From Adineta vaga (Eukaryota; Animalia; Rotifera): a stretch of DNA of 64,000 bases. The notes beneath the pieces were generated by a model. It was not told the origin of the DNA. It did no database searches and worked only from the letters and a program-made list of their open reading frames with translations. The position numbers and the translations under genes are program-made. The stretch lies in the NCBI GenBank assembly GCA_021613535.1, contig CP075496.1:10168001-10232000 (forward strand), written 5' to 3'. Of this stretch, positions 53,157 to 60,634 are shown piece by piece. The stretch's first letter is position 1. Each line of letters starts with the position of its first letter.

Positions 53157-54985
53157 ATGTCTACACATTTCGATCATCTACCAGTAGAAATCCTTCATAT
53201 GGTCTTTCAATACATGTCAAATAACGACGTAATCCGATCATTTTATAATTTAAGTTCATATTTAAATGCTGTTCTAAATCAATATTGTTTACATACATTA
53301 AATTTTCAATCTACATCAAAATCTTGTTTTGATTTCCTTTGTGATCATTTAGAATTATCAAGAATTCTATCATTAACTTTATCAGATGATATTCATACAC
53401 CTTATCAAGTGCAATTGTTTTTCAATCGATTTAAACTTCGAGATTTCATTAATCTTCAATCTCTTAGACTTTTATCAATTACTAATGAAGATATATATCT
53501 TATTCGATCTGATCTATCAGAATTGAGATATCTTACATCGTTATTTACGTCATCTCGATTATCTCAAACTTTATTACTCGGAAAAATATTGAATCAAATG
53601 AAAGTTTTGAATAATCTTTCGATATCCTATGGAGATATATTTGATCATAGTGTTACATTTCCATTACATAATTTGAAAATATTAGATGCTGGTATTTGCA
53701 ATTTCTTAGAATTACGTCGACTAAAACGTATTGTACCTTCATTAATTTCATTAAAAATTATTCTTCAAGCAAATCATCAGTTAAATTTAGTATCCGACAT
53801 AAATATTTGGACACAATTAGAACGATTAGATCTGACTTTAAAGGGTAAGTAATTTTAAAATTGATGCTAAAAAAGTTGTTCGTTTCTTTTTTGAAAAATA
53901 GATGAAGCACTAACAACGTTTGACGAAATCGAACAACTTCTTAGTCATTTTCATAATTTAACATCTTTAACTTTGAATATTCGTGGATCAGTGAATCAAT
54001 TAGCAAATGGAAAACGTTGGGAAACATGTTCAACAATTATTTCATTGAAAAACTTCAATTTTATCTTCGAATTCGAACATCCATTGCTTGATACATCTCC
54101 AGAACTTCATGACATTTTGCAAAGTTTTTCAACTTCTTTTTGGCTTGATTTAAAAAAATGGTTTGTCATTATTACTAACAATAGAGTTTATACGATAACC
54201 TGTTTTGATAATCAATTATTTCATTCATCAACACATCCACCTTTATCAACATCGCCCGATGATCAATGGTTTTATTCAAAAGTGAAACGAATCAATATCG
54301 ATAAGAATACATCATTCAATAATTTACATCGTTTTCATAAAGTTGAAAAACTTGATCTTATTGAAGAATCTATATTTTTTTTATCTATTCCAAATATCAA
54401 TCAATTTGTTTATCTTCATTATTTAATATTGCATCAATCAATTTCTAGTGCAATTATTAGTAGAATTTTAAGAACAAGTTCACATATTAATCATTTAACA
54501 CTGTCAGAATTTGATTACGATGAAAGATTTCGTTTTCAAACAATTCATAATTTACATCTACAAGAATCAATTCGAATTCTAAATCGAACACAAATTAAAC
54601 TTCTTTCACGAATATTTCCATCAATTAAGCATCTATCTATTTATATAAATTCTATTCAATTGATCTATTCAATCATCGATCATTTTCATCATCTTGAAAA
54701 TGTAATTTTTCGTTTTCAAAAATTCATCAAACCAATCTTACAAGAATTGCTTAAAGATCATACACATCTTGGTAATAATACATCTTCATTTACATGTCGA
54801 ACTGAAGAGAATATATTTTCAGTTTGGATTAGTAATTTAGTAAGTAGAAACACGATTATTATTGATTGATCTGTTTCTTTTTGGTCTATATGTAGAATTT
54901 ACCGGCAGTTCATGTAAAAATGAAATCTGTTGAGACATTGAATATGGTTCACGAAACCCGATCAAAAAAATGTTTAATACAATAA
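53157..54985 (+). CDS. F-box protein with LRR-like repeats and C-terminal CaaX, 3 exons
   Basis: N-terminal FDHLPVEILHMVFQY (F-box), LxxLxL repeats, SFSTSFWL..KKWFV. Last exon 54896-54985 ends RSKKCLIQ*. Confidence 0.8.
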
Positions 54986-55658
54986 AAATTAAAATAAATT
55001 TTATTACTAATAATGATATGGTACATTTGTTGTCGTAAAGATGCCGTTTTGACACGGTTTACATTTCGAAAGCGCATTGTAAACGGCTCCATTTTCATCG
55101 ATCTAGGTTACTTATGAGTTTCGCCATGAATTAGGAATTGAATATGGTAGAGACAATGTTTAAATTTTTTTAGAATGAGTCATTGAATAATTTTTTATTT
55201 CAAAATACATCATTTTAAATGAAAGGAATATTTTTGTTGAATAATAATTGTTTAACAAATTAATCATATGTTTTAACAGCATCAGTAATTCAGAAAAGAT
55301 AAGAAATTATTTAAATTGTGCGAAAGGATGATGATGATTTGTTTATCAATTAATCGAACTGGATCGTCTAATAAAAGAGAAGATTATCGAAAAAATTATC
55401 TGAGACATATTTTTTATCAAGATCGATACAGGAAAGATTTTCAGCCTACTGATTAGAGATAAGATAAAGTTCATCTTCTCAACATGTGGATAGACATCAC
55501 TATTATTATGAAAGAAATATTATTCTCAAAAAAGATCTTCATAATAACAATTGTCGTTTAGATCCGAATTATACTAGTGGGGAAATGAATGACAATTTCG
55601 AAATCAAATTATTTCAACGCATATGTAAATATGACTCTTCTTCGTTTTTGTTTGTTCG

Positions 55659-56672
55659 TCAAAAACCGAAAATAATGTAGTCGATTTTCGTTCTCTTCTC
55701 TCCCCTTCTTTTGATCACGTTGTTAATCGAACCATCCCTTGTTCGATCTTGATATGTTCTTCCAAATACGCACGATGTTGCACCTGCTAATCCATCAGCT
55801 AATGTACCTATTTCTTCTTTTAGATATTCACCATCTTTGATGGGTGTTAGACGCATCAAAGAATTATGTACATGTGTAGTTGCATAAATTGTTCCCATAC
55901 AATCAATAGTAAAATCATCACAAACAATATTTCGTACAATTGTTTCTAATTGTCCACGAGGACGATAATCAAATGGATCAACAGCAAGACGAAATATTAA
56001 GGCACGATCTGTATTTGTTAGATAGAGATAACCATCAACGGAACATCGACGTATACCGTTTATACCAGGCATCAGTATATCATGTGAACGATTTTTTAAT
56101 AAATCATTTTTATACCATAATTCTACTTTTTTTGTATGAGTATTGATTTTAAAGATATGTCCAAGCATTGAATCAACAGAAAGAAGTGTACCATGTTCAT
56201 ACGATAATACACAAAGACCATTTAAACATTGAGCAGAATCAACATTAACAATTTCTTTAAATGATGTAGTTGGTGTTAGTCCACGATGAATGGTAAGACT
56301 ATAAATACTCCAGCTATTATGTTGACCAATGGTACCAACATTCACATAGAAATGATTAAAACTAAGTTCAGTAATACCTGTTGGACCTGCTGGAAGTGTT
56401 GCTATTAAAGTTCGATTTGCTTTCGAAAGATTTGGATTGACTTCATAGATTTCATTGGATGAATGAACTGTAACTAAGAGATGACCATCATGTTTTGCAG
56501 CAAGATTTTCTACAAATGATCCTTGAGGCCATTCCGCAATTAATGTCATACCAGGTAAACGATGAAGAACACCACGTTCATGTTCGCCACTAGTTTCAGA
56601 AAGTTCAACAGTATCACCTGTTGAATGTAAAGCAGTTCCAAGAGTAGAAAGTGTAATACCCGACGATAGCAT
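55659..56672 (-). CDS. SMP-30/gluconolactonase-like six-bladed beta-propeller lacking its last strands (5' half of a permuted fusion gene; homologous part 56672-55740)
   Basis: ENLA, LNGL, GINGIR, DDFTID and GATSCVFGRT motifs of fungal/bacterial-type propellers. Homology stops after QDRT and the ORF reads on into the inverted repeat. Confidence 0.75.
   Translation of the reverse strand: MLSSGITLSTLGTALHSTGDTVELSETSGEHERGVLHRLPGMTLIAEWPQGSFVENLAAKHDGHLLVTVHSSNEIYEVNPNLSKANRTLIATLPAGPTGITELSFNHFYVNVGTIGQHNSWSIYSLTIHRGLTPTTSFKEIVNVDSAQCLNGLCVLSYEHGTLLSVDSMLGHIFKINTHTKKVELWYKNDLLKNRSHDILMPGINGIRRCSVDGYLYLTNTDRALIFRLAVDPFDYRPRGQLETIVRNIVCDDFTIDCMGTIYATTHVHNSLMRLTPIKDGEYLKEEIGTLADGLAGATSCVFGRTYQDRTRDGSINNVIKRRGEKRTKIDYIIFGF
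55702..55739. repeat. Left arm of a 38-bp imperfect inverted repeat bracketing the permuted gene
   Basis: CCCCTTCTTTTGATCACGTTGTTAATCGAACCATCCCT is complementary to 58280-58317. Confidence 0.8.
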
Positions 56673-56935
56673 TTTATTTCTCAAATCGATATAAACGAAA
56701 ACATGTCATATTTATTGTTGAATTGTATATGAAGAACGTCATAATGATACACTTGAATAAATCTACCTTGAATACTTTGTGAAATACACTTTTTTTGTAT
56801 AAAAAAAAACAAAGACGTCGATGAGTACTTATGAAAAAAGAACAAAAACAAAGCTTTATTTAACTCAAATATAAAGAGAGAGAAAAAAGAACAATGCTAG
56901 ATTAAAAACAAAGTAAATGATATATTTTTCAACTT

Positions 56936-58277
56936 TTAATGGTGTTCATGACGTGAAAGGTGTTGATGTGTTTTAAATAATTCTTGTTTAACATGATAAT
57001 TTAATAGATATTGATTATTTGCACTTGGTAATAACGATTTGAAAGGTTTTATATGCGTGACATCAAATACTTGTTTCGATGCAGTATACGGTTCATGTTC
57101 AATAAAATGTTGAGCTTGACGAAGATCATTTGTTGCTAATAGAATAATCATTGTTGATGAATCTTGTTGAGTTAAATTCGATGAATCAGTAAATAATGTC
57201 GATCCACTGAAGACAATGAGATGTTGATGTCGTTGAATGTATTCTAGATGAGCTAATTTTAAACGAGATAACAATTGTGGATTGTTATTCGTTAATGCGA
57301 CATGACATGTTATAAGAGTTTTGGGTAAAGATGATGTTAAATTGACTTGTTGATAGTTTTGAGAAGCACATTGATCAATTAACTCACTAAAACGATGAGC
57401 TAATTGTTTCGCACTCGCTGGATTTTGTCCTGTCAATAGAACTCCATCTTGTATGACATGTTCTTTGCCAGGACTTGCTTTAATATAGATTGCTCCATGA
57501 TCTTTAAGTTTAGTTTCAAGAATAAATGGATTTTTTTCGACAAGATTTTCATCTTCACCAATTGATAATAATTCTTCTTCTAATGAAAATCCTGTTATAA
57601 CTCTTCCATGAATAAATGAATGTGTATCATTTGCTCGACGAACATTGACTAGAGCAACAACACCATGACAAATAGCAGCTATAGGTTTCATTTGTGTATC
57701 AAAATCAATTAATAATTGTTTCAAATGAGGATGATCAACAAGATCAAACATTGGAGCATATCCCCCAGGTAAATAAATAGCATCATAATCCTGAGCATGT
57801 TGATCATCTAAAATTTGATGTGTTGGTTGAGAAAGAAGACGTATCGCTGATGACCATTCTTCACGTTGAATATCCGTTCGTGGATGTGATGTAGAATCGA
57901 TTGGAATCTAAATAAATAACAACAGTCAATGTTCTTCAAGACAATAAAACTTGAAAGAAAATACTTACTGATCCACCTTTTGGCGATACGATAACAAATT
58001 CAATACCTTCTTTTCCTTGAAATTTTTTTCGTAAAATATTATATGGTTCAGCAAATTCACTTAAATATAAACCTCTTGAATGACTTGAACAAACCATAAG
58101 TATTCGTTTAGGTGGTTCGTATAGACCTGTTGTAAAACCAACATCAAGTCTTAGCAATTTACCAGTAGATGGTGTCATCGAATTATGTCGTCTACTCGCC
58201 GTTAGCAATCCCGTCAATACTTGTGGTTGATCATGTTGAGTATGAACAATACCGCCGGTCGTTGTTATATATATAGA
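56936..58277 (-). CDS. Propeller C-terminal strands + DJ-1/PfpI (Hsp31-like) + YciI fusion (3' half of permuted gene), exons 58277-57969 and 57907-56936
   Basis: Open frame begins right after a TAA with SIYITTTGG..GKLLRLDVG. Then ILMVCSS..SEFAEPY..SPKGG..YDAIYLPGGY.PMFD..AAICHG..TGQNPASA (DJ-1/PfpI), and AHLEYI..G..EPY...VF..IKPF (YciI). First in-frame ATG at 58178; 61-nt GT-AG intron. Confidence 0.8.
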
Positions 58278-58279
58278 TT

Positions 58280-58317
58280 AGGTAGGTTCGCATATGAACG
58301 AGATCAGTTGAGAGGGG
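58280..58317. repeat. Right arm of the 38-bp imperfect inverted repeat
   Basis: AGGTAGGTTCGCATATGAACGAGATCAGTTGAGAGGGG versus the reverse complement of the left arm, AGGGATGGTTCGATTAACAACGTGATCAAAAGAAGGGG. Confidence 0.8.
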
Positions 58318-58504
58318 TTTGCAAATACCTTAACTGACGACATTATTGGCAAATGAAATATGCAATATATTGATATATTTAAGCTCTATGCACAAAAGTA
58401 CAAAAAAAAATCTTGTAGAGAAATTGAATATAAACAACAACAACAAAAACAGAGATTATTATGCAGAAAGACACGAAAAGAGAAAAACAGAAAATTTTTC
58501 ATGA

Positions 58505-60634
58505 TTATTTTTGCGGAGATGAAGGTACAAGTAAAAAATTCATATCATCAAAAGCTGATGTATAACTATTCATTGTTGCTAAAGATGGTGATGGAAGAAT
58601 TGTATTTGAATTTGGGATAATATTCTTGTCATTTTTATATTCAACCATATCTTCATGTTCAATCATATCTTTAATTAAATTTTTCAATTCAAATAAGATA
58701 CTTATTAGACAACCACTTTGTAGACGATCATAAACTTTATCCACAGTATCACTGATTGAAGATGATGTTGTCGATATATCATTCGAATATGTATGAGTAT
58801 GAATATAAATTAATTCCAAACAAAGAGAACGTAATTGTTTATAGACAAGAACAATTTCACGTTTGAACTAAAAAGATAAATCAAATCAACTTTGATATTC
58901 GTATTCATTTTACTGATTGGAAACATCCTTGATGTTACATACTACATGACCTTTTCTCTGTGCATTAAGCAGGAAATTCAAGTTAAAGAATTACTAGAGA
59001 TAATTTCCTTTCTTACCTCTTCTGTTTGAAGAAGTTCGTCTAGCAGACATTTTTCATTAATGCATGAATTAGGTTGTGTTTGTGATATTTCCACACCATC
59101 ATTATCTTCGTCTTCCATATGACAATCTTCAATGACATTATCATCTTCATCGATAATTGTCGAATTGAACCGAGTAGTTCTATGTGAATAGAGACCAAAA
59201 TCATCTTGTAATTCTTGCATGAAAGATGTTGGTACACGATTTTCTGAACTATATTGTGATAAACGATGAATTAATTCGTGGGCATCATTTAATTCTTTTT
59301 CATTTTGAAATTTCTAAGAGAAAAAATCTGAATGAAAAGTACGAGATGTTTGTCGAATAGTTACTGTTGCTTGCAAAGATCGATATTCATCTTCGAAGGA
59401 AATATATTTTCGTTGACATTCATCAAGTTTATGTGCTAATGTATCACGTTCGTCGATTACTAAATGATAGTCTAATTCAAGTTGAAGATGTTGACAATGA
59501 AGATTATTGAACTAGAATTAAAAACAAGTTTTTATTTTTCTATTGATATTAAAGATTGTTTCGATATTTAACTTGAAAGTCGATATGAGATTTGCCTTCT
59601 TGCATGTTCTAATCCTTTTTGAAAAGAAGAAAAAAGAGGGTCTACTCATCGAATTAAAAAGCGTTTCTTATTGTAATCGATCTATTGAAGATAATTTCAT
59701 TGTATGTAGTTCAATAAGAAAACAAAAATAACTCAAATCGAACTCAATTTATAGGCGACAAAACAGGATGTACTTCAAGCTATATGTTACTTTATAGAAA
59801 GTTAATTCAGTGCAAATCTTAATAGAAAAAACGCGTATTTTTATGCCCTTCGAGAAGTAAATTAGTTACCTGTTGTTTTACTATAGACAATTCGTGTGTT
59901 TGCTGTGTGTTTGTTTGACATACGGTATCAGATTGTTGCCGTAATATTCTCAATTGTTCTTGTAATCTTGATTCGCTTGTACGACTCTATTTGTGATAAG
60001 AGAATTTCGTTTGACTTGAAATTTATCAATTAGAAGAAAAATTTGTCTATATACGTACAATTTGTAATTCTTGAGTAAGTTTATAATTGATATCAGTTAT
60101 TTCTTGAATCGTTTGAATTTGTTGTTCATCATGAATTCGTTGTTCACGACGGAAATCTTCTATTTGACGTTTTAGTTCATATTTATCTTCGTTTAAATCA
60201 ATTGTTTTCGTTTCACATTCACTTTGAACTTGTTCAACAAGTAAACGTAATTCATATCGTTCTTGTTCAAGTGCCTAGAGAAAGAAAGACAAAAAGAAGT
60301 GCTACATTTTTTTCTTCTTCTAAATCTAAATTCAGTACATCAATTCTTTGTTGATAATCTCCATTGATTATTTCAATTTGTCGTTCAAGTTCTTCTTTTT
60401 GTTCCAATAAAACTTTACCACATTTTGCTGCTAATATCAATTGACGATCTTTAATTGCTAATTGATTTATTAACGAATTATCCTAAATAACATAGTAAAA
60501 TATCTTATGACAAATGTTTATACAAATAAACTTACTTGATCATCTTGATTACAACAATTATCATTATTTGTCATATCATCAAGGTATTTAATGGATGTAA
60601 AATTTTCGATTTCATTTAATAAATTTTCTTCCAT
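58505..60634 (-). CDS. Bicaudal-D-related coiled-coil dynein adaptor (BICDR-like), multi-exon
   Basis: CC1-box LILAAKCGKVLLEQKEEL followed by LEQERYELR and long heptad repeats across several short-intron exons; ATG at 60634. Confidence 0.7.

What the first reader, a model, noticed from the sequence alone, without database searches (positions are those of the whole stretch)
55702..58317. Circularly permuted gene whose two outer ends rejoin in frame, bracketed by inverted repeats
Seen: on the minus strand the downstream ORF (ATG 56672) is a beta-propeller whose homology ends at ..GATSCVFGRTYQDRT (55740). The upstream ORF has no natural start and begins right after a stop with SIYITTTGG..GKLLRLDVG (58277), then DJ-1/PfpI and YciI. 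Knowledge: this propeller family ends FGR-x-x-x-D-x-x-x-LY(V/I)TT-x-GG...GK-h-h-x-h-D. Joining 55740 to 58277 gives FGRTYQDRT|SIYITTTGG with no missing or extra codon (at most one shared A), a single protein of about 737 aa. The gene is therefore stored 3'-half first. Both halves lack stops and frameshifts, and 38-bp inverted repeats begin within 1-2 nt of each breakpoint. There is no GT/AG at the junction, so ordinary back-splicing does not explain it. The retained 61-nt intron argues against a retrocopy of spliced mRNA. Inference, alternatives: (a) a 2.54-kb DNA circle carrying the intact gene integrated at the centre of a palindrome or abutted transposon ends; (b) the intact gene is regenerated by precise excision and circularisation; (c) the two halves are joined as RNA, guided by pairing of the complementary arms.
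Basis: partly seen in the sequence, partly recalled or inferred. Interest (0 to 1): 0.95.

Follow-up and report, generated by a model that had tools for sequence, protein, structure and literature searches.

The report
Permuted rotifer gene rejoined at junction
A fungal-type enzyme gene in a bdelloid rotifer chromosome is stored back half first, selection has kept both halves intact across rotifer genera, and molecules joined at exactly the predicted point exist, so the animal must rebuild the gene by a route not yet identified.

Summary
On the minus strand the locus reads: arm A, C-half (last two propeller strands, DJ-1/PfpI, YciI; one 61-nt intron), a 263-nt spacer, N-half (propeller), arm B. 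A fungal homolog carries the same three domains in normal order, with ...FGR..DRT directly followed by .LY.TTTGG.

The permuted order sits at the same syntenic place in A. ricciae and A. steineri, and is also found in Didymodactylos carnosus. Both halves are under purifying selection (dN/dS 0.08-0.34). The C-half has no usable start codon, and often has a stop one codon upstream.

The predicted junction 55740|58277 is present, with no mismatch, in a contig of one public run (X17, probably RNA). It is also present in 8 short contigs from relatives, one of which closes on itself at unit length. DNA contigs of the laboratory clone cross both breakpoints unbranched.

The arms are unique in the genome, conserved, and pair from the breakpoints outward (z -4 to -7). 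Strand-specific covariation was not shown, and D. carnosus has no arms. The junction is not GT-AG.

My best reading is arm-guided, non-spliceosomal joining of RNA (0.45). The main rival is a precisely formed DNA circle (0.28). Reads-level tests are needed to decide.

The parts
58278..58322 (-). Arm A: the 45 nt just upstream of the C-half. It ends ...GCGAACCTACCTAA, and its last three bases are an in-frame TAA stop.
   Evidence: Pairs with arm B. Unique in the genome. 73-84% identical among Adineta species, where synonymous sites differ by 34-55%.
57969..58277 (-). C-half exon 1 (103 codons). It encodes the last two beta-strands of the propeller (SIYITTTGG, GKLLRLDVG) and then the start of the DJ-1 domain. 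It has no start codon of its own.
57908..57968 (-). Spliceosomal intron, 61 nt, GT..AG.
   Evidence: Removing it restores SPKGGS|IPIDS, matching fungal SPKGSAVPIDP. It is spliced out in the NCBI gene model P0193. D. carnosus has no intron here.
56936..57907 (-). C-half exon 2 (323 codons plus TAA): the rest of DJ-1/PfpI, then the YciI-like domain.
   Evidence: Pfam. dN/dS 0.075-0.21.
56673..56935 (-). 263-nt spacer between the C-half stop and the N-half ATG. AATAAA lies at 56860-56855. A motif conserved across species lies at 56771-56730 and is probably the core promoter or 5'UTR of the N-half.
   Evidence: An RNA contig of X18 ends at 56818.
55740..56672 (-). N-half (311 codons): a beta-propeller lacking its last two strands.
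   Evidence: dN/dS 0.09-0.34. The last 9 nt, GATCGAACA, are invariant in all 19 loci.
55640..55739 (-). Arm B (55739-55695) plus a conserved flank. Conservation stops about 90-100 nt after the breakpoint.
   Evidence: Unique in the genome.
55725..55748 (-). Local hairpin GATCGAAC / GTTCGATT, with the N-half breakpoint in its 8-nt loop. It competes with the arm A-arm B duplex.
   Evidence: RNAalifold on 9 species: 8 pairs, almost unchanged across species.
57402..57402 (-). Site of a second intervening sequence, at codon 168 of exon 2 (KQL|AHR). It is absent from this haplotype and about 1.13 kb long in the other haplotype of the clone.
   Evidence: X8 records 20 and 21, X1 loose end. Orthologous inserts of 866 nt in L018 and 923 nt in L021.

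Best explanation
A gene of fungal type was acquired horizontally. It encodes a six-bladed propeller fused to DJ-1/PfpI and YciI domains. In the common ancestor of Adineta and Didymodactylos it became circularly permuted in the chromosome, probably when a circular copy reintegrated after being opened between codons T311 and S312.

The locus still works because the two halves are joined again after transcription. Arm A lies just upstream of the C-half and arm B just downstream of the N-half. They pair and set the two breakpoints side by side at the foot of one helix. The RNA is cut there and the N-half 3' end is ligated to the C-half 5' end. This is not done by the GT-AG spliceosome. The product would be either a linear mRNA from two transcripts (cap-N-C-polyA) or a 2.5-kb circle, encoding one 737-aa protein.

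Shown here: the permuted DNA order, its age, selection on both halves, the lack of a start codon for the C-half, conserved complementary arms, and the exact junction in nucleic acid of the same clone.

Inferred, not shown: that the joined molecule is RNA, which enzymes act, and whether the product is linear or circular.
For: 1. Run X17 holds an 819-nt contig with 0 mismatches to the window that joins 55740 to 58277. It has no coverage of either arm. Its whole assembly is only 17.8 Mb, the size of a transcriptome.
2. DNA runs X1 and X8 of the same species cross both breakpoints in single unbranched contigs, so the chromosome has one permuted unit and no colinear copy. The gene is single-copy in the 100.8-Mb assembly.
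3. The same order occurs in A. ricciae, A. steineri and D. carnosus, with the same neighbouring genes in A. ricciae and A. steineri.
4. dN/dS is 0.08-0.34 at dS 0.45-1.0 in N, C1 and C2.
5. The first C-half codons, S(I/L)YITTTGG, change only synonymously between species. Yet TAA stands at codon -1 in four species, and no in-frame ATG follows in exon 1 in A. ricciae, A. steineri or D. carnosus.
6. The arm duplex has z -4.2 to -6.9 in four Adineta lineages and always starts at the breakpoints.
7. The arms and about 90 nt of flank are conserved while DNA beyond them cannot be aligned.
8. GATCGAACA is invariant at three synonymous sites in 19 of 19 loci.
9. An AlphaFold2 model of the colinear fungal homolog puts the breakpoint between two strands of the propeller, so the N-half alone is incomplete.
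Against: 1. All 8 colinear contigs from relatives retain the short spliceosomal intron. Two also retain the spacer, and one of these carries a transposon insertion in it. This looks more like DNA than mature mRNA.
2. No full-length spliced 737-aa product is in the protein collections.
3. That X17 is RNA is the tool's guess. In the 4.5 kb laid it shows no intron skip or spliced leader, and it has no coverage of the well-expressed upstream gene.
4. Cognate arm pairs are no more stable than arms swapped between species (p 0.28).
5. G.U oppositions (8) do not outnumber A.C oppositions (10) on the sense strand.
6. D. carnosus has the permuted gene but no complementary arms.
7. No known ribozyme or RNA family matches the flanks.
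8. No bulge-helix-bulge (BHB) motif or IRE1-type loop fits the cut sites.
Confidence: 0.45

Rival explanations
1. Joining at the DNA level. The 2.54-kb unit is copied or excised precisely at the two arm boundaries into an extrachromosomal circle. On the circle, promoter, N-half, C-half and poly(A) signal form an ordinary colinear gene. The circle is rare in bulk DNA but is the template of the functional mRNA.
For: The colinear contigs keep the intron (8 of 8). L009 and L010 also keep the spacer. L010 has identical first and last 31 nt, a closed unit of 2575 nt. L009 wraps from N192-311 through C and the spacer to N1-162. Colinear forms were seen only on contigs of 3 kb or less, while split forms reach 1.1 Mb. 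The spacer holds both a poly(A) signal and a conserved promoter-like motif. The symmetric G.U and A.C counts fit a DNA repeat as well as an RNA helix. Other first-stage notes on this genome report footprints of reintegrated circles; these are unchecked.
Against: DNA contigs of the clone (X1, X8) show no branch at either breakpoint, no back joint and no empty-site joint; contigs can drop rare forms. No recombinase-type core is evident: only 1 nt is shared at the crossover, there is no target duplication, and the arms are single-copy. A gene-specific excision system kept since the Adineta-Didymodactylos split has no precedent in animals outside programmed genome rearrangement. No relative was found in IMG/VR viral contigs.
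Confidence: 0.28
2. Lineages differ in DNA arrangement. Some Adineta lineages carry tandem arrays (A-C-(N-C)n-N-B) that include whole colinear copies. The colinear contigs come from those lineages, and the X17 junction comes from a variant line or a library artefact. In A. vaga itself the halves are not joined.
For: Apart from X17, no colinear contig is more than 96% identical to any split contig. Each colinear contig is a lineage of its own. Tandem arrays collapse into circular unitigs in short-read assemblies.
Against: X17 matches this haplotype without a mismatch, whereas the clone's own DNA contigs differ from the window at about 0.6-1.3% of sites. Single-unit lineages (A. vaga, A. ricciae, A. 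steineri, D. carnosus) keep both halves under purifying selection although the C-half cannot start translation. Colinear lineages are interleaved with split ones (92%, 90% and 96% nt identity to the nearest split relative), so many exact conversions would be needed. No long contig holds an array.
Confidence: 0.1
3. There is no joining. Two separate polypeptides are made and assemble non-covalently, the C-half supplying the two missing propeller strands. Junction contigs are template-switch artefacts at the foot of the arm helix.
For: NCBI annotates two genes, P0151 (314 aa) and P0193 (393 aa). A polymerase could jump across the foot of a helix exactly at these positions.
Against: There is no conserved start codon for the C-half, and a stop stands at codon -1. 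The codons upstream of any ATG evolve as coding sequence. The joined form is the only form assembled in X17 and in 8 other contigs, whereas artefacts are minor species. D. carnosus has no helix to jump across.
Confidence: 0.07
4. A dead relic: a DNA circle integrated once into a palindrome, and the halves are decaying pseudogenes.
For: The geometry fits: a single shared breakpoint flanked by inverted repeats.
Against: The arrangement is conserved across two bdelloid orders, with dN/dS 0.08-0.34 and no stops in any half in more than 15 lineages. Only the L008 and L017 copies are degenerate.
Confidence: 0.03

Closest known systems
Circularly permuted tRNA genes of the red alga Cyanidioschyzon merolae, and split tRNA genes of Nanoarchaeum (from my own knowledge; not read here)
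   Same: The 3' half is encoded upstream of the 5' half on the same strand. Leader and trailer sequences pair to bring the true ends together. The functional order is restored by cutting and ligating, not by the spliceosome.
   Different: Those are 70-90-nt tRNAs cut at a bulge-helix-bulge (BHB) motif by the tRNA splicing endonuclease. This is a 2.2-kb protein-coding frame in an animal. Both cut sites lie at the same end of the helix and no BHB can be drawn. The RNA nature of the product has not been shown.
Back-spliced circular RNAs promoted by flanking inverted repeats (mouse Sry, Alu-flanked exons; from my own knowledge)
   Same: Complementary sequences bracket the segment that is closed head to tail. 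One contig closes at unit length (L010).
   Different: Those use GT-AG sites and come from genes that are colinear anyway. Here the junction is AG..AA or AA..TA, and it is needed to create the reading frame.
Trans-spliced split genes: Giardia Hsp90 and dynein, C. elegans eri-6/7 (from my own knowledge)
   Same: Separately placed gene pieces are joined into one mRNA with the help of complementary flanking sequences.
   Different: Those have canonical splice signals, and the pieces are not a circular permutation of one unit. Separate transcripts were not shown here.
Reintegrated extrachromosomal DNA circles, which give circularly permuted duplicates
   Same: A single shared breakpoint and an exact head-to-tail relation. 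This is the probable origin of the arrangement.
   Different: Such footprints are normally neutral duplicates. This one is the only copy, is old, is under selection, and its rejoined form is observed.
Scrambled genes of ciliates (Oxytricha), reordered in DNA
   Same: The stored order differs from the expressed order.
   Different: There are no pointer repeats (only 1 nt is shared). Bulk animal DNA shows only the stored order.
Natural circularly permuted group II introns that release RNA circles (PMC8637638; only the abstract was seen)
   Same: A permuted arrangement yields circles of the enclosed RNA.
   Different: No group II or other Rfam family matches the flanks. That system is bacterial.

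Membership tests
Permuted or split tRNA-type processing (BHB endonuclease plus ligase) | 3' half encoded upstream of the 5' half on one strand | tested here: met
Permuted or split tRNA-type processing (BHB endonuclease plus ligase) | Bulge-helix-bulge: two 3-nt bulges carrying the cut sites, separated by a 4-bp helix | tested here: not met
   In the cofolds, both cut sites sit at the same end of helix 1 (arm B base 1; arm A 2 nt past its last pair). The exons do not pair with each other.
Permuted or split tRNA-type processing (BHB endonuclease plus ligase) | Circular or trans-ligated RNA product | tested here: inconclusive
   The junction is seen and there is a closed unitig, L010, but RNA or DNA was not established.
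Spliceosomal back-splicing or trans-splicing | GT..AG (or AT..AC) at the joined boundaries | tested here: not met
   In the window the removed sequence reads AGGGAT...CCTAA, or AAGGGA...ACCTA when shifted by the shared A. Most relatives have GT 2 nt after the breakpoint, but none has an AG at the C-half start. Only in D. carnosus would GG|GT and AG|T splice in frame.
Spliceosomal back-splicing or trans-splicing | Complementary flanks | tested here: met
   z -4.2 to -6.9 in four Adineta lineages. Absent in D. carnosus.
TIR DNA transposon (the arms as terminal inverted repeats) | Multi-copy family with the same ends, and a target-site duplication | tested here: not met
   The arms and their flanks are single-copy in 100.8 Mb. 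Only one A is shared at the two boundaries.
Site-specific (tyrosine or serine) recombination cassette | Identical core of 2-8 nt at both junctions | tested here: not met
   The identity at the crossover is 1 nt.
Extrachromosomal circle derived from the locus | Head-to-tail junction in DNA reads, and/or an empty site | tested here: inconclusive
   Neither appears in the contigs of DNA runs X1 and X8, but contigs drop rare forms. The colinear contigs that keep the intron and spacer are of unknown nucleic-acid type.
DJ-1/PfpI (PF01965) | Pfam score above the gathering cut-off | tested here: met
   47.2 bits against a cut-off of 26.6.
YCII (PF03795) | Pfam score above the gathering cut-off | tested here: inconclusive
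   22.7 bits against a cut-off of 24. The fungal colinear homolog ends with the same EPYTAS motif.
Six-bladed beta-propeller of the lactonase / calcium-dependent phosphotriesterase kind | Homology and fold | tested here: met
   617 phmmer hits at E<=1e-10. Names given by sources include 'sugar lactone lactonase YvrE' and 'calcium-dependent phosphotriesterase'. The AlphaFold2 model of P0008 is all-beta with pLDDT above 90 over residues 10-310. Pfam itself gives only a faint hit to Vgb_lyase.

The most novel reading that the evidence does not exclude
An animal nuclear protein-coding gene is kept in circularly permuted order for tens of millions of years and its reading frame is rebuilt each time at the RNA level by a cut-and-ligate reaction that does not use the spliceosome, guided by pairing of the flanks. 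This would be an mRNA counterpart of permuted and split tRNA genes, possibly passing through a translatable 2.5-kb RNA circle.
Probability: 0.35. Interest if true: 0.95.

Novelty: new variant of a known kind. Interest (0 to 1): 0.85.

Why it matters
If the joining is at the RNA level, this would be the first animal protein-coding gene known to me whose frame depends on non-spliceosomal rejoining of permuted halves. It would offer a natural system for finding the nuclease and ligase involved, and for studying how circular or trans-ligated mRNAs are translated.

If the joining is at the DNA level, it would be a gene-specific, precise and conserved formation of a circle in an animal. That would bear on how bdelloids capture, circularise and reintegrate foreign DNA.

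Either way it is a warning for annotation. Three genome projects split this gene into unrelated models or fused one half to its neighbour.

Tried and rejected
- Arms as a transposon family: rejected. They are single-copy in the genome.
- Known ribozymes or RNA families in the flanks or in the colinear contigs: none found, even at permissive E-values.
- BHB motif, IRE1-type 7-nt loops, RNase III-type geometry, Helitron ends (5'-TC..CTRR-3') and a recombinase core: checked by eye. None fits.
- Strand-specific wobble signal: G.U 8 against A.C 10 on the sense strand, so no signal.
- Co-evolution of the arms: cognate against swapped arm pairs gives p 0.28. A few compensatory pairs exist (GGTTCG/CGAACC to GATTCG/CGAATC in L008), but they are not significant as a set.
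- A full-length spliced colinear protein: not found with the N-half, exon 2 or the 423-aa P0157 as query, nor in the length-unrestricted search.
- Papers on the run or sample accessions, and on bdelloid circles or circular RNA: nothing relevant.
- IMG/VR viral contigs: no relative.
- Flanking inverted repeats in D. carnosus: none.
- The 11 loose letters of X17 at 57854: no source found in the window.
- Complex prediction was not used, because strand complementation of a split domain would not separate the rival explanations.
- All searches were done exon by exon, by reference.
Full report
**What is in the window.** The window is G000:C4:10168001-10232000 of a 100.8-Mb, six-contig assembly. The genome carries 42 copies of the bdelloid spliced-leader sequence. 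NCBI names the encoded proteins as Adineta vaga.

On the minus strand the locus reads, from upstream to downstream:
- arm A, 58322-58278, ending in an in-frame TAA;
- C-half exon 1, 58277-57969, beginning SIYITTTGG;
- a 61-nt GT..AG intron, 57968-57908;
- C-half exon 2, 57907-56939, followed by TAA;
- a 263-nt spacer;
- the N-half, from ATG 56672 to 55740, ending D-R-T;
- arm B, from 55739.

Exon 2 holds DJ-1/PfpI and a YciI-like domain. The three coding pieces add up to 737 codons without any stop. I did not build, search or fold the joined or spliced sequence. Every search used the pieces by reference.

**Is the join real biology?** A length-unrestricted phmmer search with the N-half gave 1427 relatives. 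One-domain members extend about 25-40 residues past the point where the N-half stops. The 654-aa protein P0008 of the ascomycete Trizodia has all three domains in normal order and reads FGRSASDRT|TLYTTTTGG...RLLRIDVG. An AlphaFold2 model of P0008 has pLDDT above 90 across the propeller. It places the breakpoint (after T280) between strands 267-272 and 281-286, with strand 302-307 still to come. The N-half therefore lacks the last two propeller strands, and these are the first things the C-half encodes. The gene's nearest non-rotifer relatives are fungal, which fits horizontal acquisition.

**Age and selection.**
- The gene is single-copy in this genome.
- The same C-then-N order lies behind the same upstream gene (Pfam Spindly hit) in A. 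ricciae and A. steineri, with a convergent gene downstream.
- The same order occurs in many metagenomic relatives.
- It also occurs in Didymodactylos carnosus, a different bdelloid order. There the intron is absent, so the intron was gained after the permutation.
- Against A. ricciae, A. steineri and other relatives, dN/dS is 0.08-0.34 at dS 0.45-1.0 in all three coding pieces.
- The first C-half codons stay S(I/L)YITTTGG through synonymous changes (TCT, TCC, AGT; ACG, ACA, ACC, ACT). Yet TAA stands one codon upstream in four species, and exon 1 has no in-frame ATG in A. ricciae, A. steineri or D. carnosus.

Those codons must be translated as the continuation of another frame. The only frame that fits is the N-half.

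**The junction is observed.** Reads were laid on 54800-59300.
- Run X17 is dated 2013 and labelled a different organism name. The tool guesses RNA, and the whole assembly is 17.8 Mb.
- X17 holds an 819-nt contig that matches 56499-55740 and then 58277-58218 with no mismatch. The tool reports it as 'goes back 2538', with one ambiguous base.
- X17 has no coverage of either arm.
- DNA runs X1 and X8 cross N|arm B and arm A|C in single contigs without a branch (records 7, 8, 17 and 22). Two alleles run through the arm B flank.
- The clone's chromosomes therefore carry one permuted unit and no colinear copy. Contigs cannot exclude a rare form.

**The junction in relatives.**
- Eight database contigs from relatives show the same N-to-C1 junction: L009-L012, P0173, P0174, P0185 and P0186.
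- They are interleaved with split lineages. Their nt identity to the nearest split relative is 92%, 90% and 96%.
- All are 3 kb or shorter, while split forms sit on contigs of up to 1.1 Mb.
- L010 (Logan) has identical first and last 31 nt, which makes a closed unit of 2575 nt.
- L009 runs N192-311, C1, intron, C2, spacer (with a 530-nt MITE) and N1-162.
- All eight keep the spliceosomal intron.

This is the main unresolved point. Retention of the intron and spacer is natural for DNA (a circle or tandem array). For RNA it is expected only of an unspliced circle or a precursor. No full-length spliced product is in the protein collections.

**The arms.**
- Without gaps the repeat is unimpressive: 22 nt at 77%.
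- With bulges, arm A and arm B form about 27 pairs. The energy is -33.9 kcal/mol against -19.1 +/- 3.4 for shuffles.
- The same holds in three other Adineta lineages (z -4.2 to -6.9), and more weakly in L018 and L008.
- Pairing always starts at arm B base 1 and leaves two unpaired bases at the end of arm A.
- The arms are unique in the genome, so they are not transposon ends.
- Arm identity is 73-84% among Adineta species, where synonymous sites differ by 34-55%.
- Conservation ends abruptly about 90-100 nt past the N-half. Upstream of arm A it continues through the whole 3'UTR of the neighbouring gene.
- The last nine N-half bases, GATCGAACA, are invariant in 19 of 19 loci while the preceding 12 nt vary. 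They form a local hairpin with GTTCGATT of arm B, with the breakpoint in its loop.

**Limits of the arm evidence.** Swapping arms between species does not weaken the duplex significantly (p 0.28). G.U and A.C oppositions are equally common. D. carnosus has no complementary arms at all. The arms are constrained and complementary, but RNA-specific covariation is not shown, and they cannot be the universal requirement.

**What the joining is not.**
- The boundaries are not GT-AG or AT-AC.
- Most relatives have AG|GT two bases after the breakpoint, but none has a matching acceptor.
- Only in D. carnosus would GG|GT and AG|T splice in frame, and there the AG comes from an AGT serine codon.
- No BHB motif can be drawn, no Rfam family matches, no recombinase core or target duplication exists, and Helitron ends do not fit.

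**Weighing the explanations.**
- The A. vaga data favour joining after transcription: DNA permuted and unbranched, X17 joined and without arms, and X17's assembly far too small for genomic DNA at that depth.
- The contigs from relatives favour a DNA circle or array.
- I put RNA-level, arm-guided, non-spliceosomal joining at 0.45.
- A precise DNA circle serving as the transcription template gets 0.28.
- Lineage-specific tandem arrays with no joining in A. vaga get 0.10.
- Separate polypeptides with artefactual junctions get 0.07.
- A dead relic gets 0.03.
- The remainder is for something not considered.

**Novelty.** I found no paper describing this. Its nearest analogues are permuted and split tRNA genes, repeat-driven back-splicing, trans-spliced split genes and ciliate scrambled genes. 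It differs from each of them in at least one defining feature.

Noticed in passing
window 57402 (minus-strand gene); L018:4501-5367; L021:193-1116: A second intervening sequence lies at codon 168 of exon 2 (KQL|AHR). It is absent from this haplotype. In the other haplotype of the clone it is about 1.13 kb (X8 record 21 at depth 13, against the uninterrupted allele at depth 20). It is 866 nt in L018 and 923 nt in L021. Its ends are not GT-AG. It carries a conserved small membrane-protein ORF on the opposite strand. That ORF was not found in the haploid assembly.
   Followed up: partly
window 55805-55840, plus strand: RNA run X18 has a contig whose end carries CTTACCAAG, the end of the bdelloid spliced leader. 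It is joined at the acceptor TTTTAG|A at 55822-55824 on the plus strand. This is an SL-trans-spliced transcript antisense to the last part of the N-half.
   Followed up: partly
window 58323-58505 (minus strand); L005, L013, L015, L018, L025: The roughly 180-nt 3'UTR of the upstream Spindly-like gene, directly before arm A, is conserved almost base for base across Adineta species, more than the coding sequence. It holds a TATA-like TAAATATAT about 95 nt before the C-half.
   Followed up: no
L013:2148-5764; L015:2000-5721: The NCBI models of A. ricciae and A. steineri fuse the upstream Spindly-like gene with the C-half (860 and 841 aa). The A. vaga record instead calls two separate genes of 314 and 393 aa. 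None of the three shows the real gene.
   Followed up: partly
L008:4848-7177; L017:6466-7032; L007:471-1082: A divergent clade (62-65% aa identity) holds fragment copies consisting of N105-311 plus arm B. In L008 this is followed, 1.2 kb later, by arm A, C1 with two in-frame stops, and C2 codons 1-70. This could be a piece of a duplicated permuted locus or of a colinear gene with an insert. In P0177 and P0002 the N fragment reads on into a new tail with a membrane segment.
   Followed up: partly
L009:1862-2394: A 530-nt MITE with ends CAGTGATGGGCAACTCC...GGAGTTGCCCATCACTG, full of GGAGTTGGAGTTG repeats, is inserted in the spacer of a colinear, wrapping contig.
   Followed up: no
window 54898 and 59145: DNA run X1 reports one contig joint that skips 4246 nt (54898 to 59145, TT..AT). 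Only 22 letters lie on the shorter side, so it may be a repeat artefact. If real, it would remove the whole locus and part of the upstream gene.
   Followed up: no
L012:1687-1805: The colinear contig L012 leaves the gene after C2 codon 108 and continues in unrelated sequence. This is either a chimera or another interruption.
   Followed up: no
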